Source of the DNA: Bispira polyomma
Taxonomy: Eukaryota
Direction of reading: 5' to 3'
DNA: 64,000 nucleotides
Assembly (NCBI GenBank): GCA_965649765.1
Contig: OZ287753.1
Span: forward strand, 9,052,001-9,116,000
In this document: positions 549-16,105 of the stretch, piece after piece
How the letters are laid out: each line of letters starts with the position of its first letter
Numbering within the stretch: the stretch's first letter is position 1
Translations under genes and position numbers: made by a program
Notes under the pieces: model-generated
What the model saw: the letters and a program-made list of their open reading frames with translations, nothing else
What the model was told of the DNA's origin: nothing
Databases searched by the model: none

Positions 549-3513
549 ATGGCCACTGCTTCGTCTACCTTCTCATCAATACTCTAAGTCACACTTGCCA
601 TGAAGATCATCAAACTAAAAAAAAAAACGTGCATACAGGCTTAAGCACCAGCTTCACCAATCTCAATAGTTTATCCTTGGTTTAATTTGGGTCAGCACCT
701 TCAGAAGAAGATGCCACAATCTTACCGCAGACCCATCGCAATACAAAAACGGAAATGGAAACATATCGTGGTATGTTTTATCATTACTGCTTACTTCTGG
801 AGACATAAACATCAATCCAGGTCCCTGTAAATTTTCTATGTGGTTGTTGTGATAAACCCGTTCGCTGGAACCAAAAAGGTATATGCTGTGACAACTGTAA
901 TATCTGGTATCATAAATCCTGTGCAAATGTATCCTCAGCTGTTTACAGCACACTACACCATTCAAATGTGTCTTGGATTGGTTGCAATTGTGGTCTGCCT
1001 AATTTTGACTCCTCATTATTTAATTCTTATGAACTAGATGTTTCAAACCGTTTTGAATCCTTGTCTTCAAATACAACCTCTGGACTACCGTCCACACCTC
1101 CACCAACTCCAATCCCTCTGGCTACATCTTCTCCAAGAACTCCAAAACCAAAGCTGACAAAAGGTCCTGCCAGTAAAAAACACTGGAGAACAATAGTCAT
1201 TAACTGTAGGAGCGTAATAAATAACCCACAATTCTTAACAGCCATTGATTATATTAAACCAGACTGTATTATGCGATCAGAAAGTTGGTTAGAAAGCTCC
1301 ATTACAAACTCTGAAATATTTCCACCAAATTATAACATTTATAGAAAGGACAGGAATAGTAACGGAGGTGGTGTATTCACACTGATCATATATCTTCTGC
1401 AATGAATTTAGATCAAGACAACACCGAAATTATATGGGCTAGAGTAGACTTAAAAAACACAAAAAGTCTGATTATTAGAAGCTTCTATAGACCCCCTAAC
1501 CACTTAGAAGAACCGTTAGAAGGCCTGAAAAACACACTAGAACAACTTCCAAAAGACATTAGTAACAAGCATATAATACTTGGAGGTGATTTTAACCTTC
1601 CAGATATTGACTGGTCTACTAAATGTACAAAACCAAGTGGCAAGAATATTAAACTTTGTAGCGCATTATTAAATACAACAGATGACTTCTCACTGGAACA
1701 GCAAGTGGAAGAACCAACTAGGGACATAAATACCCTCGACCTGTTCTTTACCAACAAACCATCACTGGTAAATAAAGTAAGCACTACACCAGGCATTTCT
1801 GATCACGATATAGTAGTTATAGATTCCAACATCCAACCAAAACACAACAAGAAAAAACCAAGAACTATCTATAAGTACACAGATGAAAACATAGCTGCGG
1901 TAAAACATCAACTAAGTGATTTTAGTGATAAATTCTACAAATCCAAGTGTAAAACTCAAATTGTGGATGAACAATGGGAGTATTTTAAAAACTCAATTAA
2001 TGAAGCAGTTGTTAAAAATATACCATCTAAAATTACATCGACCAGATACAACCTATCATGGTTAAACAGAAACCTAAAACATCTGATTAAGAAGAAAAAT
2101 ACACTATATGAAAAGGCTAAAAGCTCAAATAGCAGTAGTGATTGGAATAAATTCAAAGATCTAAAACACCAATGTCAAAAAGAAATCAGAAAAGCTCATA
2201 GTCATCATGTGGGGAACATCCCAAAACCCAGCTTTGAAGAAAAAGACACTAAGAAATTTTGGAACTATGTGAAGAGTAAGAAAAATGAAAACATTGGTGT
2301 CCAACCCCTGAAATCAAATGGAAAGTTTAACAGTGATGATGAAACAAAAGCCGAAATTCTTAACAATCAATTCCAATCTGTCTTCACCCAGGACACTGAC
2401 GATGATACATCACCTCCTAATCCAACATATCCTGAAATAGACCATCTTTATGTCTGCCGTAAAGGAGTAACCAAACTCCTCCAGCAACTAAAAACAAATT
2501 CTGCATCAGGACCAGATAATCTGGCAAACAGAGTATTAAAACATTGTGCTGAGGAATTATCACCTGTTCTCACCTATATTTTTGAACAGTCCCTAAAAAG
2601 TGATACACTCCCTAAAGACTGGCTAGAAGCAAATGTGGCACCCATCTTTAAGAAAGGTGACAAACACAAACTACAGACCAGTATCTTTAACTAGCGTATG
2701 TTGTAAAACTATGGAACATATTGTGTGCAAACATATTCGAAACCCTCTTGACAAACATCACATTTTAACACCCCACCAACATGGTTTTCCTTGTAAACAT
2801 TCATGTGAGACCCAACTCATTGTAACAATAGATGATATATGCAAGCACTACAATAATAAAGCACAACTGGATATGATAATACTAGACTTCTCGAAGGCCA
2901 CAGTCTCCTAGTGAAAAAACTGCACTCTATGGGAATTACAGGGTTAGCTCATAACTGGGTATCCTCCTTTTTAGCTAACAGAACACAAAGAGTTATAGTG
3001 AATGGAATATCTTCGTCTGAAGCACCAGTTACATCAGGTGTACCACAGGGTTCAGCACTAGGTCCCCTACTGTTCTTATGCAACATAAACGATCTACCAT
3101 CTCGTGTAAAATCCCAGGTACGACTTTTTGCAGATAACAGCCTTTTATACAGGACTATTAATACAGTAACTGATGCTCTTATCCTCCAGCAAGAGCTACT
3201 CTCCTTAGAAAAATGGGCAAACCAACGGAAAATGCACTTTAATCCCATAAAATGCTATGTTATGAGATTTAGCAGATCAAAAGCTACAATTATCACAACG
3301 TACACTCTTTGTAACCACATCCTAGAGGAAAAGGATACAAACCCTTACTTGGGCGTCCTATTTCATTCAAGTGCTAAATCGAGTACTCACATCTCCACAG
3401 TATGTAAGAAAGCAAACTCTACTTTGGGATTCCTCCGACGCAACCTGTTTAACTGCCCTAAAGAACTCAAGGAAGTTCCTTATTTCGCTCTGGTACGCTC
3501 AAAACTGGGGTAT
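549..3513 (+). mobile_element. LINE A, 5' part (CR1-group non-LTR retrotransposon: 2A-like motif, PHD finger, APE endonuclease, RT), frameshifted
   Basis: LLLTSGDININPGP (784-825); PHD finger CGCCDKPVRWNQKGICCDNCNIWYHKSC...WIGCNC (~839-990); APE motifs INCRS, SESWL, YRKDR, GDFN, SDHD; RT motifs GVPQGSALGP, LFADNS; reading breaks off at LVRSKLGY at 3513. The 5' boundary is approximate. Confidence 0.92.
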
Positions 3514-5885
3514 TTTTTTTTTATTTAAACATAATTTATTCAATGACAATTACCCACAGCTACAAGCCACTTGGGGTTCTTGTCCCAAAATACACATTTT
3601 ACAGTCAAACAACAACATATAGTACAAAAAGAAATACAATACACTATTGAGTAATAATTTAGCAAAACAGGATGTTATTACATAGTACAAAAGATGAATG
3701 ATAGGATGACATGTAACATGTGTGACATTAAAATCTAATTTATAGTGAACCGATTGGTGTGTGAAATAAACAACTGTACTATGTCAAATAGTGTTCGATC
3801 AATTTTAAAAAAACCAGTGCCATACAGTAAAATATGTGATAACTCACTTGGACTACCAAGTAGATTAATTTCAGGTATATGAGTACTTATGTTCTGTAGC
3901 ATTTCATCTCTATGAGCAGCAAAAGCAGGGCATTTTATGAAATAATGTGTCACAGTTTCTGGACCAGTTTTACACACAGAGCAGCGGTCGTCTTCTATGA
4001 AATTTCATGATCTACGGTGGAAGTTCAAAGCACTGAGACCCATTCAAAGCCTACTGTGGTATACTGCAGGTTTACCTATGTGCCACAAGTTCGCTTTATT
4101 AAATTTTACTTGATAGTTTGATTTTAGCTTTGACTTAAAAGTTTGAAGTGATAAGACACCTCTCATATCAGAGCTAAGATGGTTCCAAAATCTTATAACT
4201 GATGGAAAGAATGATTTGTAGTAATAGTCTTTCTTACAAAGAATTGGCTGAATATGCGTACTATTTCTCAGATTATAGCCATGCACACCACCCTTGGGAC
4301 ATAACTTGTAAAGATATTCTGGAGAGTAATGATTCAGAATTTTATACATTAGGACAAGTTTTTTTATCAAACGTCTGTCCTTGAGCTGTTTTAATCCACA
4401 TTCAGATAAAAGACATTTATGTTTAGTAGCTTTATAGTCCCCAGTAATTGTTAAGCAAAACGGTCGTTGTATCGACTCTAACATCTTTTGTTGTTCAACA
4501 GAGCAGCTATCATACAATTCTGCCCCATACTCTAATATAGGTCTTGCATAGCTCACATATATCTGTCTCTTAGCTAAACGGGGCAGCTTGAATGACAATC
4601 GCTTTAGCTGAGATAGTATTTTGAGTGCTTTATCTGCCATATTTTCTAAATGATTGTTCCATGTCATCTTAGAATTAAATGTTACTCCAAGATGGGTCAG
4701 ACAGCTTACTTTTTTAAGTTTACTGTCGCCCAGATACAGATCAGGATTATCTGTTGGTGTCAATTTCTTTGAAAATATTATGTATTTGGTTTTGAGAGGG
4801 TTAAAATTCACTAACCATTTTTTGCCCATTTATTTAAACAATCAAGGTCTTTATTAAGGAGCAAGAAATCATATTCAAGACTTGATATTGGCCTACACAA
4901 AGATGTGTCATCTGCATATAGAAAACTTTCAGACTCAAGATCATCAGCTATATCATTAAAATAAATTAAGAAAAGTAATGGACCAAGGATAGACCCCTGT
5001 GGGACCCCACAATTAATGTCAATATAATTTGAACTCTTACCCCCAATCACAACTCTTTGTTTCCTATTTTTTAAGTAATCTTTTAACCATTGAAACAGTA
5101 TGCCACCAATTCCAACTTTTTTAAGTTTATGTAATAAACCGGGGTGCCAAACTCGATCAAAAGCTGCTGTGGCATCAAGTGACACAAAGCAACAGTCCTG
5201 TCCATTTTCTAAAGCACTATAAATTTTATGAGTGATGGCAATGAGATGATTAATAGTGGAGTCCCGAGGTTTGTAGCCGGAGTTCCTCCAAGTTAAAATA
5301 TTATTTTGGATACAGTAGTTATACAGGTGAGAAAAGACTACTCGTTCCAGTACTTTACCAACATTTGACAATAATGAGATTGGCGGATAGTTGTTTATAT
5401 CTTGCTTATCATTTTTTCCTTTGTAAACTGGAGATACATTTGCTCTTTTCCAGCAACTAGGAACTTTGCCTTGAGATAAGGAGCTGTTAAACAGGTCACT
5501 TAAAGGTTTTGAGATAACACCACATGTTTCCTTTAGTAGCCTATTACTCACATTGTTAGGACCATTTGCCTTATTAATATTTAGGGATTGTAATATTTTG
5601 TACACTTGCTCTTCGGATGTCTGTATTGAACATAAGCTGTAGGGGGTATGTTCCAATATTTTTGGCAGTTTAGGTGATTCAGTATTATCTGGATGTTTCG
5701 ACTTCCTGAAGAAATGCTGGTTAAATACCTCACACTTTTGTTCATTTGTGGAAACAACATTTTCTCTGTAAATAAGTACTGGTATGCTAGACCTACATTT
5801 TTGGCCATAGGTTGTCTTTAGCAAATGCCAATAAGTGTTTTTCAATACTTCTATTGTGGTAGTTTTCCTTAGATTGCATAATACA
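3514..5885 (-). mobile_element. LINE B, 3' part (RT, C-terminal Cys/His region, poly-A tail)
   Basis: ORFs 4811-5968, 4044-4829, 3735-3977: GVPQGSILGP, LYADD, ARPILEY, SFFPSVIRFWN, C..C...ET..HY..C. Poly-T on the + strand at 3513-3522 abuts the TSD. Confidence 0.92.
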
Positions 5886-8800
5886 TTGCCCATCAATATA
5901 AGTGATTCATCCGTGAGAAGGCAGGTAGATGTACGCCCCAAGACTGTTAAGTCATCTCTATCAGCCAATGTCAGTGATCAGCTCATATGTAGTAATCTCC
6001 CAAGTCAGCACTCACGTTTCGCATCCAAACCTACAGGTATTAACAACACTGATAATCTTCCTCCATCCCAAGATTCCCGTACAATGAACGACAGTCCTGA
6101 TGAATTCAGATTGCCAACGGAACATGTTAAACAAATGAGAAGAAGGGAGCGTCGACAGGCTATCATAGGAAAGGGAAGTACTGTATCAAGACTTAAAGGT
6201 GCACCAGAACCCGGACGAGATTTTTTTGTTTTTCGACTGGACCCGGTTATTACAGACAGTGATGTGAAATTTTACTTAGAGGCTCAGAATGTATCTGTGC
6301 TAAAGATAGAGCAAATGTCACACGAGAATTCCAAGTATAAATCTTTCAAAGTGACAATTCCTATATCCAGTTTGAATGATTTACTCAATGAAGAAGCATG
6401 GCCAATTGGGATAGGTGTTAGAAGGTTTCGTAATGTCAAGAAACAACTTGATGAACACAAATAATATGTATATTATTCATGATTTATTGGTGTAATAGTT
6501 TTAAAACTGAAAGTGAACAAATTACTCTCTATCTGTACATATAATTCTCACGGTAGTGGTGCAGGAAGGTTTGAATATTTAAACCAACTTTTTGCAAAGG
6601 CTGATATAGTTTTAGTACAAGAACTTTGGTTAGCTGAAATCAGTTTAGTTTTTTTAGTAAAAAACTATCTAATATTAATTTTCATAGTGTGACACCCATG
6701 TCCTCCAGTAAAATTAATTATGGACGCCCATTTGGCGGATGTGCAATACTGTGGAATAGCTCACTGATAGCATCTGTTACTCCTATTGTAAACCAATCAA
6801 AAAGAGTATGTGCTGTAAAAGTAAAATTTGGCCCTTGCAGTTACCTATTGTGTAAATGTATACATGCCTACTTATCAGGCTGCTCAAAATTAATATATAG
6901 AAGAACTAAACGGTGTCTTGAATGATTTAGAGTCTTTAATAAAAGAATCTGATGAAGAACATATAATTATTGGTGGGGACTTCAATACATCGTTTTCCAG
7001 AACTGGTTATAATACTGATGCACTGTTATCTTTTATGAGTAGAGAACAATTGAATTGTGGTTTAAATCATGACAATTGTGAAATTCAGTTTACATTTGAA
7101 AGTAAGGTAAATGGATCTAGATCAATAATTGATCATTTTCTACTGAGTGACGTACTTATGAATAAGGTTTTACAGTATAGATCTTTACATGATCATGATA
7201 ATTTTTCTGATCACTGTCCAGTTTTAATGCAATTAAATGTACCTACTGATTATTCGTTGAATGATTCTGCGGATAATAAACAAAATGTGCCACTGTGGCA
7301 TAAAGCAAGTGTTTCTGATTTAAATTCCTACAAAACTATGTTAGACTCAATGTTATCCAGTATTAATATTCCATCCTGTGTTGTTAACTGTACAACATTA
7401 AAATGTGAAAACAGGAGTCATTGTCAAGCTATTGAAAACTTTCATAATATGATTGTCAGAGCCTGTGGTGTTGCTTGTGATTCATGTATACCAAAAACAA
7501 AAAAATGAATAATTCAAATGTAAATAAAATTCCTGGTTGGTCAGAATATGTTGAGCCACATAGGCAGCAGAGTATGTTTTGGCATCGGTTATGGAAAGAA
7601 AATGATTGTCCAAGATCAGGTTGGATCGCTGAGATTCGCTAGAAAACTAGAGCCAAATACCATTATGCTCTAAGGCAAGTAACGAGAGACAAAGAAGTTA
7701 TTCTTGCAAATAAACTAGCTGAATGTGTTTTATGCAATAAAACTAATGATTTTTGGACCAGTGTAAAAAAAGTCAAAGGAGTTAAATCATTTAATCCTAA
7801 CAATATAGATAGTGTTGTTGGTGGTATAAATATAAGTAACCATTTTTCTAATAAATACGAAGAGTTATATAACTCAGTTGGTTATAATGTTAATGAAATG
7901 CAATCTCTTGTTTCAAATATGAATGAGTCAATTGTGCAAAAATGTACTTCAGATAGCTGTTACTTTAAACACTTCTTTAATGTTAGTGAAGTTATTGATG
8001 CTGTTAAACTACTAAAACATAACAAAAGTGATGGAGTTAATCAATGGTCTGATAACATTATTCATGGTTGTCATAAATTATATGTATATCTGAATTTACT
8101 GTACAACTCTATGTTAAAGCATTGTTTGTCACCTGGCGACCTACTTGTATCAACAGTTATACTAATCCCAAAAAATAGAAAGAAATCATTAAATGATTCA
8201 AAAAATTACAGAGGTATAGCCCTTAGTAGCATCATAGATAAGGTTCTTGAATCGTTAATTTTATCCAGCAGTAGAAATATTCTAAAATCAAGTGATTAAC
8301 AGTTTGGTTTTAAAAGAAAACAGTCAACTACTCAATGTACATTTGTGTTAAATGAAGTAATCAAATACTATAATAATAATAGGAATGACGTATATGTAAT
8401 GATGTTAGATGCCAGTAAGGCCTTCGATCGTGTAGAGTATACAAGACTGTTTTCTCTATTGGTAGAGAAAGGTTTATGTCCTCTTATATGTCGCCTACTG
8501 GCTTATATGTACACACATCAAACAATTAGAATTAAATGGGCCATTATGTTTCAAAATCTGTTAAAATATCAAATGGTGTAAAACAAGGGGGCATTCTATC
8601 CCCTGTGCTTTTCACAATTTATATGGATGAAATGTTTGAAAAATTAAAAGGGAGTGGTTTAGGTTGTTATATTAGAAATGTGTTTATGGGTGGATTAGGG
8701 TATGCTGATGATGCTGTATTAATATCTCCTACACTATCTTCAATGAAAGAAATGCTTAAAATATGTGATGTTTTCGGACATAAATATAATGTGTTGTTTA

Positions 8801-9697
8801 ATGCAGAAAAATATGAACTTCTGCACTTTCCAGCTTCAAAAGGGAAAATGATTGCAGACGTATGTCATAATAATATATATATTAAATGTGTTTCACAGTC
8901 TGTGCATTTAGATCACATAATTGGTTTAAATGCAAAAGTAAAAACGATAGATGAAGCTATAAATTCATTTAATGTTGCTTTAAATAGTATACTTAATACA
9001 TTTCAAAATGCATCTGTGTCAGTGAAATACAAATTGTTTAAAAGTTATTGTATGCCTCTCTATGGCTGTGTACTATGGGATTCTGAATCTAGAGAAATTT
9101 TAAAATTTTATACAGCATGGAGAAAAGCAATAAGAAGACTATTTAACCTGTCAAGCAGAAGCCATAGTAGATACATATATTTAGTATGCAATGATGTCCC
9201 AATTAATGTGCAGTTGTATAAAAGATTCAACAAAATTATAAATACAATACTGACCAGTGATAACATTTGTGTAGAACTTGCTAGTAGACTGGCTGTTTAT
9301 GGAAGTCATTCCAATGTGGGAAAAAATATTAATGTAATGTCAAAGGAACTTAATTGTAGTTATAAATGTGCTCTTAAAGCACCTCAAGAATTTAAAAATA
9401 TAAGTGACAAGAATGTTAACTCTCAGATTAACATAGAGGATGAAATAATATGTGGAAATATTAGAGATCTCATTAGTATTAAAGAGAGAAATCATACTAA
9501 ATTTAATTATACTGAGATTAGTTGTATGTTAGAATGTTTATGTACATCTTGAAGATTTGTATAAAATTTAACGTAACTGCCAAACTGTAAATAGTGTTTA
9601 ATAACATTGTTCCTTGTTCCTGGTTGAAAAAAACATTTATGTATTCTGTATTTGTAATATTATACCTTGTGTAGGAATAAATAAATTAAATAGAAAT
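5886..9697 (+). mobile_element. LINE C (CR1/L2-group, 5'-truncated in ORF1), nested in LINE B
   Basis: ORF1 RRM-like tail to 6464 (DFFVFRL...YKSFKV...WPIGIGVRRF); ORF2 fragments TYNSHG, VQELWL, GDFN, IDHF, SDHCPV, DASKAFDRV, GVKQGGILSP, YADD; A-rich tail gaataaataaattaaatagaaat at ~9675-9697. Boundaries approximate. Confidence 0.92.
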
Positions 9698-10454
9698 ATC
9701 CAGAGTACTAAGAGCTTGCCAAGGTACAAGTTTTAGCTCCCCACAAAAATTCACAAAATCACCCCTGTTATAATGCCACACATCTCTTGTGTAAGAATGA
9801 TCTTTGACATGAGTAATAGCTGTTTCACAAAAAAATCATATTGTGATGTGGATCTCCAATTGGTTCAGCCACACCATAATCCAAAATAATACCAGGAGAA
9901 TCAGTGATAATTAAGTCAAGCAGATGAGCAGATGTTGGTGTAGTGTGTGTTGGAGATTCTATGATTTGAAAAAGATTATTTTGACTGATCAAATTTGTGA
10001 ATTTATCTTTTAATTCACTACTTGGATGGTCATCAACCCAGTCTACACACCGGTCATTAAAATCACCTAATATAAAGAGAGAATCATATTTACTGTTATA
10101 TATCAAGTCTAACATACACTGGAAGTCAGCAATGAAGCTATCAGCTTGTTCAACTGTTGCCCCAGGTGATCTGTAACAACACACAATTAGACAATGTTTT
10201 GAATTTACAATCACTTCCAATACAACTGCTTCTAAGTTTGAGTTACAAAGGTCAATTCCATTTTTAACAGCTAAATTTTCTGCAGTGTATATAGCTACAC
10301 CACCCCCATGTCTATTTCGATCTTTACGATAAACACTATATCCTTCTGACAATATATCGGAGTCAGGTATACTTGAATCCAACCATGTCTCACTCATACA
10401 GATCAAATCATATTGACCATCTAAGCATAACTTGTAATTTATCACATCAAGTTT
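9698..10454 (-). mobile_element. LINE B, APE endonuclease region
   Basis: KLDVINYK...DLICMSETWL...YRKDRNRHGGGVAIY...YRSP...GDFN...LDLI; same orientation as the 3' part; cut off by LINE C at ~9697. Confidence 0.9.
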
Positions 10455-11018
10455 GAAAAAATTACCTTCAATAATTAGAGAACAGCGACAAGCCCAAGTA
10501 CCCAAAATGCAAGAACTTAGAAAGCAATTACCTGACAAGAAACAACATACTGTCAAATTAGTTAATAATAAGCTATTACATAACAAGCATATTGTGGATG
10601 GTGAATTTGTTAAAAATCCCTTGCCAGCTGCTGAGGCTACTGATGATGTATTTGAGTACAATGACTTGGTGCACTCTGAAGTGAAGGAATATAAAGACAG
10701 TTATTTCCAGGCTCATGCTATTCAGGTCAAAAGCACCATGGAGGCATGTTTGGCAAGGGGTGCACTTTATCAAGGAACATCAGCAGGCTCTGCACATCAC
10801 TTGATCTATGTGTACCGATTTGAGGATAGTCCTGGAGACCTAGTGGAAGGTTACAGTGATGACGGTGAGGTCAGAGGCAGCATGGAAATTAGACGGGCAA
10901 CAGGAAAAATTTGTTTATAGCCGTCACACGTGTGCATAATGGGCCAAACATTGGCCAGAGGAGGTTTGATTTGATTAGGGATGTAACAGAAGTTGTGCTT
11001 GACAATGCTGGGCTGTGA
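10453..11018 (+). pseudogene. LINE B ORF1 C-terminus: ORF1p CTD-like segment fused to an IMPACT/YigZ (UPF0029)-like domain, one frameshift at ~10900
   Basis: LPSIIREQRQAQVPKMQELRK...VKLVNNKL (ORF1 CTD-like), then SYFQAHA...AHHLIYVYRF...EGYSDDGE and, after the frameshift, NLFIAVTRVHNGPNIGQRRFDLIRD...GL* (TGA 11016-11018). Confidence 0.8.
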
Positions 11019-11687
11019 ATCTTGAGACTTATATGCTTAACAAATTTTAAGTATTGTAAATGTATATGGTTACCCAGAATAAATGTAATTAAGTTGTGCT
11101 TCCCAATGCTGGGCTGATATTGACACTTGTATTCTTAACAAATGTTGTACTAAAAATGCATATGTTTAACCAGGATAAATGTAATTAAGTTATAAAATCT
11201 TCTAGCTACCAGTAGCGTCAGTTAAATTATATCAATTAAAATATATACTCAAACCTCTAAATTGATCATTTCGTTTAAACTGTTCTAATCACAGTTTACT
11301 GTTCTTCTTTACTAGATAACAATTTTTAATTGAATCAAACCATAAAGCATGATAACCTATAAAATTCTGTACATGTTTTAGTTTGCCAGTGGGAGATTTC
11401 CTAGTGTAAATCCTTTATTTATGTTTATTGTAATTTCCCTTGCACTCCATTTATCATCTCATTCATTTTCAAACAACATGTGTGACTTATACGTAAGGTT
11501 AGGTTGTTTTAAAGGTATATTTTCCTTTGAATTGAGACTGTTCTGTAGCATTTCATGTTTATACTTAATATATTTTCTTCCGTGACTGACACATTACAGA
11601 ATCGAGCAGCTCCAGGGCAGTTACTGTCAAATTGTAGTAAATCTAGATTTAAAATATGTCATATAAATGTTCGAAGTGTATGTTCTA
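10455..11687 (+). mobile_element. LINE B, inverted 5' segment (end of ORF1, inter-ORF spacer, first ~45 codons of ORF2)
   Basis: + strand 11555-11689 reads MFILN...SRFKICHINVRSVCSK, which joins in frame to the minus-strand KLDVINYK starting at 10454. The segment lies inside the TSD. Confidence 0.88.
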
Positions 11688-12195
11688 AAAACTGGAGTAT
11701 GCTGCCATTGCATGGAACCCTTACTTGAAGAAGGACATTTACCAACTTGAGGCAATACAAAGAAGGAGTGCACGTTTTGTATGCAGAAACTATGACAGAG
11801 AGAGACAAGTGTGATCAAAATGATTGCGGAGCTAGGTTGGGACAGACTGGAACATAGAAGGACTGATGCTAGCCTCAGTTTCTTTTACAAGACCATTAAC
11901 AACCTGATAGCAATAGATCACCAAGAGCACCTGGAGCGGTCAACCTCATCCACAAGAAAGAAACACCACCTGCAGTTTCAACACATAAGATCTACGTGTG
12001 ATCAGTTCAAATACTCTTTCTTTCCTAGGATAATTCCAATATGGAATAATTTGAATAGTAACATTATTGACGCAAAATCAATTGAACAGTTTAAAACGAA
12101 AAATTGAAAAACCCTTACTAATTTTATTTAAACCACCACGCATGCCTGGATGTGTTACTCCAATAGGAGGTTATCCAGTATACTACAGATACAGA
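11688..12195 (+). mobile_element. LINE A, 3' part (resumes after the LINE B insertion)
   Basis: Reads KLEYAAIAWNPYLKKDIYQLEAIQRRSARFVCRNY... then (frameshift) LGWDRLEHRR...YSFFPRIIPIWNNL, the expected continuation of LVRSKL. TSD aaaactggggtat (3501-3513) / aaaactggagtat (11688-11700). Short tacagatacaga tail at ~12183-12194. Confidence 0.9.
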
Positions 12196-15055: not shown

Positions 15056-16105
15056 CTATGTACCCAACACGGCTATAGTTGTTGGGACAATTCTGCTCCC
15101 ATTGGCATTATCTGACTGGCGGCACATGGTAGCCACAACCTGTCTCCGAAGACGACTGTTTTGCATGAGAAACATCATTGGCATTGCAACAGTGTCCAGG
15201 TAGCTGAGATTGATGAAGAAACGGGTGATGTTTAGCAGCTGCAGTGGGTCTTTCGTGAGTTGCGGGATGATGGCTAGGAACCATCCAACATAAGGCGAGA
15301 TGTAGGTGAAGGCGAACACGCAGCTCAGAAGTACACCCGCCTTGAGTGTGAATGCATCGCTCTTGCCCACTTTGAAGTTACTTTTCCTTTTACGGATGAG
15401 GTAGGCGATGAGAGTATAGCTAATGAAGACCATACTGAACAGGATGATGAGCATACTAGCCTTGATCAATGTTAAGTAACTAAGTGAAGCATCTCCGCTG
15501 AATGGCAGACGGGCAAGGCAGATATTTTGTATTGAGCTTTCAGGCAATAAGGTCGGTACAGTTAGGAGGCCACTAATGATGCTGTTGACTACCAGGATCT
15601 TTCGAACGGTGGCTCCCTGTAGCTTAACCACAGATGCCACAATGCAGACATAGGCCCGTAGTAAGGCAATGGCTGCGGTCATGATGAGACCAAAGTTGTA
15701 ACCATAGCCCCTCATGAAGATCTTCACGATGCAATACGGTTCTGTCTGAAAGTCGAAATTGCGGCAGATCTCTACCATCTCCATGATTGTTGTGGTACAG
15801 GAACGTAGGATGTTGATAACCAACATGGCTGACACAAGATTATTGAAGGGTGTTCTTAGGTGCTTGCTCCGCTGGATGGTCCACACAACAAGGGCATTGG
15901 GAACAGTGAACAGGAGAATGACCGACAGCCAGGTAATGTTAAGGATACTGTACCACTTCAAAGGCCCACTGGGGAAATACAACCTGTTAATGGTGTGGAG
16001 GCCGGATGTGGACATTGTAGTGTGCTCACTGTCACTGAAGTTCTCCACTTTTTCTGTCCAATTTGTTGTCTGGCCAGGAAAGTCCCTCGATGTGGATTCA
16101 TTCAT
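15056..16105 (-). CDS. Intronless rhodopsin-like (class A) orphan GPCR, 349 aa
   Basis: N-terminal N-glycosylation sequons (NES, NWT, NFS), seven hydrophobic segments, TM1 PNALVV, loop RTPFN, Cys at the top of TM3 (PYCIV), IALLRAY at the DRY position, basic ICL3, helix-8-like NSRLRRQV; GC higher than the flanks. Confidence 0.9.
   Translation of the reverse strand: MNESTSRDFPGQTTNWTEKVENFSDSEHTTMSTSGLHTINRLYFPSGPLKWYSILNITWLSVILLFTVPNALVVWTIQRSKHLRTPFNNLVSAMLVINILRSCTTTIMEMVEICRNFDFQTEPYCIVKIFMRGYGYNFGLIMTAAIALLRAYVCIVASVVKLQGATVRKILVVNSIISGLLTVPTLLPESSIQNICLARLPFSGDASLSYLTLIKASMLIILFSMVFISYTLIAYLIRKRKSNFKVGKSDAFTLKAGVLLSCVFAFTYISPYVGWFLAIIPQLTKDPLQLLNITRFFINLSYLDTVAMPMMFLMQNSRLRRQVVATMCRQSDNANGSRIVPTTIAVLGT

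What the first reader, a model, noticed from the sequence alone, without database searches (positions are those of the whole stretch)
10453..11018. A LINE ORF1 that ends in an IMPACT/YigZ (UPF0029)-like domain
Seen: an ORF1p-CTD-like stretch (LPSIIREQRQAQVPKMQELRK...VKLVNNKL) runs directly into S-F-AH...AHHLIYVYR...SDDGE...NLFIAVTRVHNGPNIGQRRFDLI. Knowledge: this is the motif order of the IMPACT/Yih1/YigZ 'ancient' domain (S-F-A...A-HN-AYR...DDDGE...NV-VVV-RW-GG-LG-RF-I). The RWD domain that IMPACT uses to bind GCN1 is not present. The accessory domains I know in CR1/L2 ORF1s are PHD, esterase, RRM and zinc knuckles, not this one. Inference: the segment is inside the TSD and ~540 bp upstream of the element's own ORF2 start, so it belongs to the retrotransposon and is not a neighbouring gene. 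The lineage may have captured a host translation-stress or nucleic-acid-binding domain for its RNP.
Basis: partly seen in the sequence, partly recalled or inferred. Interest (0 to 1): 0.85.

Follow-up and report, generated by a model that had tools for sequence, protein, structure and literature searches.

The report
LINE ORF1 protein with IMPACT domain
A jumping gene (LINE) in this animal genome encodes an RNA-packaging protein that ends in a full copy of the universally conserved but still unexplained IMPACT/YigZ domain; hundreds of LINE lineages share this design, and no paper I could search describes it.

Summary
Window 10462-11018 (+) is the 3' part of a LINE ORF1. It holds a CTD tail followed by a UPF0029/Impact_N domain that is broken by one frameshift near 10905.

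Copies of the same family with an unbroken frame match Pfam PF01205 over the whole profile (44-52 bits, cut-off 27). An intact 370-aa ORF1 from a second assembly folds at pLDDT 92.9 into coiled coil, RRM, CTD and a UPF0029 domain. The first three parts resemble human L1 ORF1p. The last resembles Yih1 and TT1547.

The window copy lies on the minus strand. Its 5' 1.23 kb is inverted in the way twin priming produces, and it has a poly(A) tail and a 12-bp target-site duplication. The domain therefore arrived in the same insertion as ORF2.

This is not a one-off capture. The genome holds at least 427 UPF0029 candidates, many in intact ORF1s. Public data hold 506 clusters at E<=1e-10. The LINE-borne domains form one clade next to animal IMPACT proteins. 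They occur in L1-like LINEs, in L1-like LINEs with an esterase ORF, and in non-L1 (CR1/Jockey-like) LINEs such as this one. RWD and DUF1949 are absent.

What the domain does in ORF1p is inferred only. I found no description in searchable papers. This scan noted the same design in two other windows of this genome.

The parts
10462..11018 (+). 3' part of ORF1: end of the CTD (about 10462-10600), a linker, and the UPF0029/Impact_N domain (about 10693-10997). A frameshift lies near 10905-10909. The ORF1 stop TGA is at 11016-11018.
   Evidence: Translations; Pfam hits on both pieces; alignment to unbroken copies and to P0001.
11019..11554 (+). Spacer between ORF1 and ORF2. It holds two ~101-bp tandem repeats (10990-11097 and 11091-11191); the first starts in the last codons of ORF1.
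   Evidence: Self-matches seen in every copy; sequence.
11555..11691 (+). Start of ORF2: ATG plus about 45 codons, the beginning of the endonuclease. It ends at the insertion boundary.
   Evidence: ORF list. Family copies run on from here into the EN domain.
9695..10464 (-). ORF2 endonuclease domain. It is the direct continuation of 11691 in family coordinates (element 2248-3013). The inversion junction shares 3 bp at 10462-10464.
   Evidence: Pfam Exo_endo_phos E=1.4e-10; collinearity in 18 loci; map to the full-length copy.
5883..9694 (+). Nested insertion of an unrelated LINE with its own EN and RT on the + strand. It interrupts ORF2; 223 bp of the family element are missing here.
   Evidence: Map to L027; ORFs and Pfam RVT_1.
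3513..5882 (-). Rest of ORF2 (RT and C-terminal region, element 3236-5614), the 3' UTR and the poly(A) tail (T-run 3513-3522 on the + strand).
   Evidence: 93% match to the full-length copy; minus-strand ORFs of 385 and 261 aa with RT motifs; sequence.
3501..3512 (.). Left copy of the target-site duplication (AAAACTGGGGTA).
   Evidence: Sequence. The uninterrupted target sequence appears in contigs of other copies of the target LINE (loose end at 11688).
11688..11699 (.). Right copy of the target-site duplication (AAAACTGGAGTA), with 1 mismatch. It overlaps the last bases of the inverted segment, which points to microhomology.
   Evidence: Sequence.

Best explanation
The stretch is the tail of the first protein (ORF1p) of a ~5.6-kb, poly(A)-ended LINE. 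This ORF1p is of the L1 kind: an N-terminal coiled coil, an RRM and a CTD. It carries a fourth, C-terminal module, a complete UPF0029 'ancient' domain of the IMPACT/Yih1/YigZ family, without RWD or DUF1949. The domain is an integral part of ORF1p and has been kept by selection. It was most likely captured once, long ago, from an animal IMPACT gene. It has since diversified in hundreds of LINE lineages, and records for the related clusters are mostly molluscan. It is found with L1-like ORF2s, with L1-like ORF2s plus an esterase ORF, and with the non-L1 (CR1/Jockey-like) ORF2 of this family. The window copy is dead. It lies on the minus strand, is 5'-truncated inside ORF1, has its 5' 1.23 kb inverted by twin priming, carries a frameshift in the domain, and is split by a later LINE insertion. 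How the domain works is inference (my odds about 0.35-0.4). By homology with L1 ORF1p the protein trimerises through its coiled coil and coats its own RNA. The UPF0029 module, which has an S5-domain-2-like fold and conserved loop residues on one face, would add one more contact per subunit to a conserved ligand. That ligand is most likely RNA or the ribosome, and the contact would help form the RNP next to the translating ribosome.
For: Domain identity. Pfam PF01205 is over its cut-off in unbroken copies and relatives: 44-52 bits in this lineage and 87-91 bits in other families. A profile of 49 ORF1s hits Yih1 6bqi at E=5.5e-31, TT1547 2cve at 1e-8 and YigZ 1vi7 at 2.7e-3. The same profile hits human L1 ORF1p 2ykp/2yko at 2.5e-6 and 2ldy at 3.5e-5. 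The AF2 model of P0001 has pLDDT 92.9 and pTM 0.82. Foldseek matches it to the L1 ORF1p trimer (TM 0.67 by target), Yih1 and 2cve (rmsd 3.0 over 120 columns).

Linkage to ORF2. 18 loci in this genome show ORF1 end, spacer and EN in one line. L033, from a second assembly, has an intact 370-aa ORF1 followed by EN and RT. A young sister family (L076-L080) has copies 98-99.4% identical, an intact 434-aa frame and the same EN type.

Selection. F263, H266, H294, Y297/A298/Y299, D314/D315/E317, R342, G346/G350 and R353/F354 are invariant or nearly so across 49 ORF1s that average 22% column identity. Between the two assemblies dN is 0.27 with saturated dS, the same as for the RRM-CTD. Dead copies within this genome give dN/dS of 0.6-1.1.

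Spread. There are 427 candidates in this genome, and all 150 that were scored reach at least 60 bits, many in open frames of 400-530 aa. A second search gave 600 candidates for a full ORF1. Public data hold 2422 representative clusters at E<=1e-3 and 506 at E<=1e-10. Of the top 150, 79 also match an RRM-CTD model.

Single origin near animal IMPACT. All 95 LINE-borne domains fall on one side of one branch (SH-aLRT 94), next to IMPACT-like proteins and a group that includes nemertean and nematode IMPACT. The host's own IMPACT exon is separate and much closer to nemertean IMPACT: 64% identity against 30-40% for the LINE copies.

One insertion event. The inverted and direct segments abut in element coordinates (2250|2248), and the copy has a poly(A) tail and a 12-bp TSD.
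Against: No experiment or expression data bear on the domain's role. The RNA/ribosome-contact idea rests on fold class and on what is known of ORF1p and Yih1; the ancient domain's own function is unknown (PMC4503747). In this lineage the motifs are degraded relative to the canonical ones: RVHNG replaces RWYGG, and DDNE replaces DDGE in the young family. The biochemical role may therefore have drifted. Pfam's own L1 ORF1 model (PF02994) does not detect the RRM-CTD. The tree rests on about 130 columns, was built with a quick search, and has no bacterial outgroup. The nearest IMPACT-like neighbours are unnamed metagenomic proteins. All family copies in this genome that I examined are broken. Repbase and Dfam could not be consulted.
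Confidence: 0.85

Rival explanations
1. The domain does not act as an extra RNA contact. Instead it mimics or decoys a host factor. Like IMPACT's ancient domain it would engage the translation machinery or a conserved partner, such as the ribosome, actin or a CDK. This would let it tune translation or the stress response around the LINE mRNA, for example to aid ORF2 translation or to blunt GCN2 signalling.
For: The LINE domains are closest to eukaryotic IMPACT/Yih1: 111 bits against 38 and 20 bits for the bacterial proteins. They sit next to animal IMPACT in the tree. Yih1 and IMPACT associate with ribosomes, actin and Cdc28/CDK1 (PMC4503747).
Against: The RWD domain that binds GCN1 is absent. 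In Yih1 the regions sufficient for ribosome, actin and Gcn1 binding were mapped to the RWD-linker part rather than clearly to the ancient domain (PMC4503747). No partner was tested here.
Confidence: 0.25
2. The domain is an enzyme or a small-ligand sensor. The invariant His, DDGE and Arg residues would form an active or ligand-binding site that acts on a nucleotide, an RNA end or a metabolite during retrotransposition.
For: His, Asp/Glu and Arg residues are strictly conserved across very divergent ORF1s. In Yih1 and YigZ the invariant features cluster in loops on one face of the domain (PMC4503747). Other LINE accessory modules are enzymes: some of these same elements carry an esterase ORF.
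Against: No catalytic activity is known for any UPF0029 protein. The young CR1-like family has DDNE instead of DDGE and this lineage has lost RWYGG, which would be unusual for an essential catalytic site.
Confidence: 0.15
3. The domain is a neutral passenger: a host IMPACT fragment picked up by chance and carried along without contributing to the element.
For: All copies of the window's own family in this genome are decayed. The domain's motifs are eroded in this lineage.
Against: The domain is kept full-length at the same position in at least 95 divergent ORF1s, with invariant family residues. dS is saturated while dN is 0.27. Young families have intact frames. The domain is retained across three element architectures.
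Confidence: 0.04
4. The stretch is a one-off chimera or an assembly artefact in this window: a host gene fragment or a mis-join next to a LINE.
For: The window copy is rearranged by an inversion at 10462-10464, and public contigs did not span the junctions specific to this window.
Against: The same ORF1-domain-spacer-ORF2 order is found in 18 other loci and in a second assembly. The rearrangement has the exact geometry of twin priming, with a TSD and a poly(A) tail.
Confidence: 0.02

Closest known systems
Type II (L1-type) LINE ORF1p: coiled coil + RRM + CTD (human L1ORF1p, PDB 2yko/2ykp/2ldy)
   Same: The domain order, the fold and the position upstream of an EN-RT ORF2 are the same. The profile hits at E=2.5e-6 and Foldseek gives TM 0.67. 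Type II ORF1s are already known in the L1, CR1, L2 and R1 clades (PMC4120745).
   Different: It has an extra ~110-residue UPF0029 domain after the CTD. Pfam PF02994 does not reach it. The domains listed for ORF1s in PMC4120745 are CC, RRM, CTD, CCHC, PHD, esterase and zf/lz. UPF0029 is not among them.
IMPACT / Yih1 (eukaryotic RWD + ancient domain; PDB 6bqi)
   Same: The ancient domain is the closest solved relative (E=5.5e-31, 111 bits). It shares the S-x-F-x-G-H, H-x-x-Y-A-Y-R, DDGE, V-x-R-W-x-G-G and RF motifs. The tree places the LINE domains next to animal IMPACT.
   Different: There is no RWD domain and no linker, so the known GCN1-competition mechanism cannot apply. The domain is intronless and multicopy and sits inside a LINE ORF1. 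The host's own IMPACT exon is separate.
Bacterial YigZ / TT1547 (UPF0029 + DUF1949; PDB 1vi7, 2cve)
   Same: The N-terminal domain has the same fold (Foldseek 2cve rmsd 3.0 over 120 columns).
   Different: Sequence similarity is much weaker (38 and 20 bits). The C-terminal DUF1949 domain is absent.
Esterase- and PHD-bearing ORF1s of CR1-like LINEs (e.g. ZfL2-1 esterase, PMC3905857)
   Same: These are another case of a cellular-type accessory domain recruited into the 5' coding part of a LINE. Some UPF0029-ORF1 elements also carry a GDSL esterase ORF.
   Different: The domain family is different. Here the accessory domain is fused behind a complete RRM-CTD rather than replacing it.

Membership tests
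UPF0029 / Impact_N domain (PF01205) | Match to the Pfam model over its gathering score across the whole profile | tested here: met
   The window copy is split by a frameshift into 25.5 bits (profile 1-60) and 13.3 bits (profile 74-106). Unbroken copies score 46.4 and 44 bits, P0001 52.2 bits and L077 49.3 bits, against a cut-off of 27.
UPF0029 / Impact_N domain (PF01205) | Conserved family motifs (F-x-x-H; H-x-x-Y-A-Y-R; DDGE; V-x-R; G-G..G..R-F) | tested here: met
   These are invariant or nearly so in 49 LINE ORF1s. In the window's lineage they are partly altered: RVHNG replaces RWYGG, and DDNE occurs in the young family.
UPF0029 / Impact_N domain (PF01205) | Fold of the ancient domain as in Yih1 / TT1547 / YigZ | tested here: met
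   The AF2 model has pLDDT 92.9. Foldseek gives 6bqi E=5.5e-6, 2cve E=2e-5 with rmsd 3.0 over 120 columns, and 1vi7 E=2.5e-3.
IMPACT / Yih1 proteins | N-terminal RWD domain (PF05773) that binds GCN1 | tested here: not met
   PF05773 does not hit any LINE ORF1. The region upstream of the domain is CC-RRM-CTD. True IMPACT proteins in the same searches do carry PF05773.
Bacterial YigZ | C-terminal DUF1949 domain after UPF0029 | tested here: not met
   The ORF1s end within about 5-25 residues of the UPF0029 domain. Pfam finds no second domain.
Type II LINE ORF1p | Coiled coil, then RRM, then CTD | tested here: met
   The model has a helix at 16-83, then RRM and CTD elements. The profile hits 2ykp/2yko at 2.5e-6 over profile 60-232, 2ldy at 3.5e-5 and 2w7a at 1.4e-4. 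Foldseek matches 2yko_A at TM 0.67.
Type II LINE ORF1p | Match to Pfam Transposase_22 (PF02994) | tested here: not met
   There is no PF02994 hit at E<=0.05-0.1 in any of the ORF1s scanned. The relationship is visible only by profile and by fold.
Type II LINE ORF1p | Encoded upstream of an EN-RT ORF2 in the same element | tested here: met
   18 loci in this genome, plus L033, L064, L067, L068 and L080.
L1 clade (ORF2) | Strong full-length similarity of ORF2 to L1 ORF2p; zf-RVT-type C-terminus | tested here: not met
   In the window's lineage (L033) the RT reaches only 43 bits over 150 residues against human L1 ORF2p, and the EN has no PDB hit. Other UPF0029-ORF1 families do meet this feature: L064 scores E=1.8e-114 and carries zf-RVT.
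CR1 / L2 clade (ORF2) | Placement of the RT within the CR1 or L2 clade in a phylogeny with reference elements | not testable with these tools
   No Repbase or RTclass1 reference set was available. The EN and RT motifs look like the CR1/Jockey superfamily, but that judgement is from my own knowledge only.
Twin-priming (5'-inverted) LINE insertion | Inverted 5' segment that abuts the direct 3' segment in element coordinates, with poly(A) and a TSD flanking the whole | tested here: met
   Element 998-2250 is inverted at 10462-11691. Element 2248 onward runs directly on the minus strand from 10464. The junction overlaps by 3 bp. The poly(A) tail starts at 3513 and the 12-bp TSD has 1 mismatch.

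The most novel reading that the evidence does not exclude
The UPF0029 'ancient' domain is a self-sufficient module that docks onto the ribosome or onto RNA. LINEs took it from animal IMPACT, without the RWD domain, to hold ORF1p at the translating ribosome, either for cis-preference or to evade translational stress control. The module has since been passed between unrelated LINE clades by ORF1 swapping. [quoted passage not shown]
Probability: 0.15. Interest if true: 0.85.

Novelty: new variant of a known kind. Interest (0 to 1): 0.62.

Why it matters
UPF0029 is one of the few domains found in bacteria, archaea and eukaryotes whose molecular function is still unknown. Here it has been kept by selection for a long time in a very different setting: the RNA-coating protein of hundreds of LINE lineages, without the RWD domain through which IMPACT is understood to act. 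This adds a new accessory domain to the known set for LINE ORF1 proteins (CC, RRM, CTD, CCHC, PHD, esterase). It also gives a concrete case of an ORF1 module shared between L1-like and non-L1 LINEs. Finally, it offers abundant natural sequence variation and a simple biochemical system, recombinant ORF1p with and without the domain, for asking what the ancient domain binds.

Tried and rejected
- **Single-sequence AF2 of P0001.** The model was useless (pLDDT 36.5). It was replaced by a run on a 49-sequence alignment.
- **Bacterial YigZ outgroup.** A scan of genome contigs with the IMPACT domain of P0163 confirmed no locus. The tree therefore has no prokaryotic root and was rooted on a stramenopile IMPACT.
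- **Further own-genome loci.** I used the loci returned by the genome search instead.
- **Public sequencing runs.** Only short Logan contigs were available, and these collapse repeats. They show the canonical ORF2-start-to-EN joint and the empty target site, but they do not span the junctions specific to this window. They give no RNA evidence.
- **Literature.** No relevant paper was found for 'UPF0029' + retrotransposon, for ORF1 + non-LTR + 'IMPACT domain', or for 'PF01205'. 'Impact_N' and 'YigZ' returned only unrelated matches.
- **Pfam PF02994 on the ORF1s.** No hit.
- **dN/dS between assemblies.** dS is saturated, so only dN and the qualitative conclusion are given.
- **Readings rejected.** A host IMPACT pseudogene is ruled out because the host exon lies elsewhere and is far closer to animal IMPACT. 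Chance similarity and a one-off capture are also ruled out.
- **Not built.** All proteins used are natural open frames.
Full report
**1. The observation**

Frame 1 runs from the CTD-like stretch through the first two thirds of the domain to a stop at 10918-10920. Frame 3 carries the remainder up to the stop at 11016-11018.

Pfam PF01205 (UPF0029) matches the first piece at E=1.3e-5 (25.5 bits, profile 1-60). It matches the second at E=0.084 (13.3 bits, profile 74-106). The two matches are collinear.

The window copy is one of about 25 copies in the genome, 87-94% identical to it. Copies whose frame is unbroken hit the whole profile well over the cut-off: L003 scores 46.4 bits and L012 44 bits, against a cut-off of 27. 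Compared with these copies, the window copy has lost a few codons at the A-run near 10905, and this causes the frameshift.

**2. Anatomy of the element and of this copy**

In 18 other loci the sequence equivalent to window 10462->11691 is followed directly by the reverse complement of window 10464->9695. The first segment holds the ORF1 end, a 537-bp spacer and the ORF2 start. The second is an endonuclease domain (Pfam Exo_endo_phos).

Full-length copies are about 5.6 kb. They start about 1 kb upstream of the point where the window copy begins, and they end in a poly(A) tail.

Mapping a full-length copy onto the window gives this layout:

| Element coordinates | Window coordinates | Strand |
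|---|---|---|
| 998-2250 | 10462-11691 | + |
| 2248-3013 | 10464->9695 | - |
| 3236-5614 | 5882->3512 | - |

An unrelated LINE is inserted at 5883-9694.

So the copy lies on the minus strand. It is truncated inside ORF1 and its 5' 1.23 kb is inverted. The two segments abut in element coordinates with a 3-bp overlap. This is the geometry expected from twin priming.

The poly(A) tail is the T-run at 3513-3522. The insertion is flanked by AAAACTGG[G/A]GTA at 3501-3512 and 11688-11699. The target was the C-terminal coding region of yet another LINE. Its reading frame resumes across the insertion, and its uninterrupted form is seen in public contigs.

The UPF0029 stretch therefore arrived on the same RNA as ORF2. 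Public contigs did not span the junctions specific to this window, so the inversion itself rests on the assembly.

**3. What the protein is**

No copy of this family in the genome has an intact ORF1. A protein search found an intact 370-aa ORF1, P0001, at 64% identity in a second assembly. It is followed there by EN and RT ORFs.

With an alignment of 49 natural ORF1s, AlphaFold2 gives a confident model (pLDDT 92.9, pTM 0.82). The model has a long helix at 16-83, an RRM-like α/β unit, a CTD, and a separate α/β domain at about 256-365.

Foldseek's best hits are the human L1 ORF1p trimer (2yko, TM 0.67 by target over 191 columns) and then Yih1 (6bqi), TT1547 (2cve, rmsd 3.0) and YigZ (1vi7).

The sequence profile of the same 49 proteins gives these hits:

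| PDB entry | Protein | E-value |
|---|---|---|
| 6bqi | Yih1 | 5.5e-31 |
| 2cve | TT1547 | 1.1e-8 |
| 2ykp/2yko | L1 ORF1p | 2.5e-6 |
| 2ldy | L1 ORF1p RRM-CTD | 3.5e-5 |
| 1vi7 | YigZ | 2.7e-3 |

Pfam's own L1 ORF1 model does not reach these proteins, and no RWD or DUF1949 domain is found.

The protein is thus a type II (L1-type) ORF1p with an added C-terminal UPF0029 domain. The added domain is much closer to eukaryotic IMPACT than to the bacterial proteins.

**4. How widespread and how constrained**

- *This genome.* It holds at least 427 candidate UPF0029 matches. All 150 that were scored reach at least 60 bits. Many lie in open frames of 400-530 aa, and one 513-aa frame recurs in at least seven copies.
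- *Full ORF1 query.* A search with a complete ORF1 gave 600 candidates, and 97 were scored.
- *Public data.* A profile of the domain finds 2422 representative clusters at E<=1e-3 and 506 at E<=1e-10. In the top 150 the domain is C-terminal in 137. An RRM-CTD model cut from the alignment also matches 79 of them, and 35 of those 79 were not used to build the model.
- *Annotation and taxa.* None of the LINE-type representatives I looked up carries a name. The two matching ESM Atlas clusters (57 and 242 members) are 'hypothetical protein, Impact_N', with Mollusca the commonest phylum.
- *Conserved residues.* Across the 49 ORF1s mean column identity is 22%, yet the family's signature residues are invariant or nearly so.
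- *Substitution rates.* Between the two assemblies dN is 0.27 with saturated dS for the domain, the same as for the RRM-CTD. Decayed copies within this genome give dN/dS of 0.6-1.1.
- *A young sister family.* L076-L080 has copies 98-99.4% identical to each other, an intact 434-aa frame, a UPF0029 score of 49.3 bits and 54% identity to P0001. This shows the lineage was active recently.

**5. Origin and movement between LINE types**

In a tree of the domain (162 rows), all 95 LINE-borne copies lie on one side of a single branch (SH-aLRT 94). When the tree is rooted on a stramenopile IMPACT, their neighbours are IMPACT-like proteins and then a group that includes nemertean and nematode IMPACT. 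Among the IMPACT-like representatives that score next after the LINE-type ones against the domain profile, P0085 is named 'protein IMPACT-like' from a beetle and P0087 is an unnamed beetle protein. The host's own IMPACT gene is separate. One of its exons on contig 4 is 64% identical to nemertean IMPACT, while the LINE copies are 30-40% identical. The most economical reading is a single old capture from an animal IMPACT gene. This rests on about 130 alignment columns and has no bacterial outgroup.

The ORF2s linked to these ORF1s are of at least two very different kinds.

- The abundant 513-aa family has an intact 1200-aa ORF2. It matches human L1 ORF2p at E=1.8e-114 and has a zf-RVT C-terminus.
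- The loci of P0002 and P0006 are of the same broad L1-like kind.
- The loci of P0009 and P0027, and two loci from this genome, have a GDSL-esterase ORF after ORF1. In L071, the one locus that extends far enough, an L1-like EN follows the esterase ORF.
- The window's lineage (L033, L080) has a different EN and RT. The RT reaches only 43 bits against L1 ORF2p, and the EN has no PDB hit.

From my own knowledge, the EN and RT motifs of the window's lineage look like the CR1/Jockey superfamily. I could not test this against reference elements.

In a tree of full-length ORF1s (61 rows, 394 columns), the ORF1s linked to the non-L1 ORF2 form one clade (support 100). That clade is nested, with supports of 75-87, among ORF1s of esterase-bearing and L1-like elements. 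This fits horizontal acquisition of an ORF1 between LINE clades, as proposed for other ORF1 types in PMC4120745. Only a handful of tips have a typed ORF2, so I put this at about even odds.

**6. Mechanism**

*Shown.* The domain is a complete, well-folded UPF0029 module fused behind the CTD of an L1-type ORF1p. It is conserved like the rest of the protein.

*Inferred.* ORF1p trimerises through its coiled coil and binds its own RNA, by homology with L1 ORF1p. The extra module gives each subunit a further binding surface for a conserved ligand.

I favour RNA or the ribosome as that ligand (about 0.35-0.4). An IMPACT-like host-factor or translational role comes next (about 0.25), followed by an enzymatic or ligand-sensing role (about 0.15). 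The known IMPACT mechanism, RWD competing for GCN1, cannot apply because RWD is absent. The function of the ancient domain itself is unknown. In Yih1 and YigZ its invariant features cluster in loops on one face, which suggests a conserved partner (PMC4503747).

**7. Novelty**

The ORF1 surveys I could read list CC, RRM, CTD, CCHC, PHD, esterase and zf/lz domains and do not mention IMPACT or UPF0029 (PMC4120745, PMC5203782). Full-text searches for UPF0029 or PF01205 together with retrotransposon terms found nothing relevant. I could not check Repbase or Dfam.

Earlier notes of this scan report the same design in two other windows of this genome. My counts agree with them.

I rate this a new variant of a known kind: a type II ORF1p with a new accessory domain.

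Noticed in passing
window 3513-11691: The whole insertion is a minus-strand LINE with a twin-priming-type 5' inversion. Element 998-2250 is inverted, the junction overlaps by 3 bp, and the copy has a poly(A) tail and a 12-bp TSD. The right TSD copy overlaps the last bases of the inverted segment, which suggests microhomology at the internal priming site.
   Followed up: yes
window 5883-9694: A third, unrelated LINE on the + strand is nested inside ORF2 of the family element. It has its own 5' ORF, EN and RT. 223 bp of the host element are missing at the insertion site.
   Followed up: partly
window 2911-3512 and 11700-12107: The target of the insertion was the RT C-terminal region of yet another LINE on the + strand. 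Its frame (...ALVRSKL.Y | AAIAWNPYLKKD...) resumes across the 8.2-kb insertion. Public contigs show the uninterrupted form.
   Followed up: partly
window 10990-11191; L080:2610-3138: The ORF1-ORF2 spacer carries tandem repeats in all copies. The window's family has two ~101-bp units, the first starting in the last codons of ORF1. The young sister family has three 177-bp units plus two ~100-bp units. Their role is unknown.
   Followed up: no
L071:4053-9180, L073:5714-8101, L075, L081: Some LINEs have three ORFs: ORF1 with CC-RRM-CTD-UPF0029, then a separate GDSL-esterase ORF, then (seen in L071 only) an L1-like EN. Two accessory modules thus sit in one element.
   Followed up: partly
ESM Atlas cluster, row 3: A 64-member cluster of 419-aa proteins with an ORF1p-like fold (TM 0.56 over 266 residues) carries a NADAR domain (PF08719) in all members. 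This may be another accessory domain on the same ORF1 scaffold.
   Followed up: no
G000:C4:58684798-58684968 (+): This is probably the last exon of the host's own IMPACT gene. It is a short open frame 64% identical to residues 202-257 of nemertean IMPACT, and it is clearly distinct from the intronless LINE copies.
   Followed up: partly
L076-L080 (e.g. L077:1162-2463): In the young non-L1 family the otherwise nearly invariant DDGE motif reads DDNE, and RWYGG reads RVHNG, although the ORF is intact in several near-identical copies.
   Followed up: no
window 15056-16105 (-): An intronless 349-aa ORF with several hydrophobic segments that looks like a seven-transmembrane receptor. I did not test it.
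   Followed up: no
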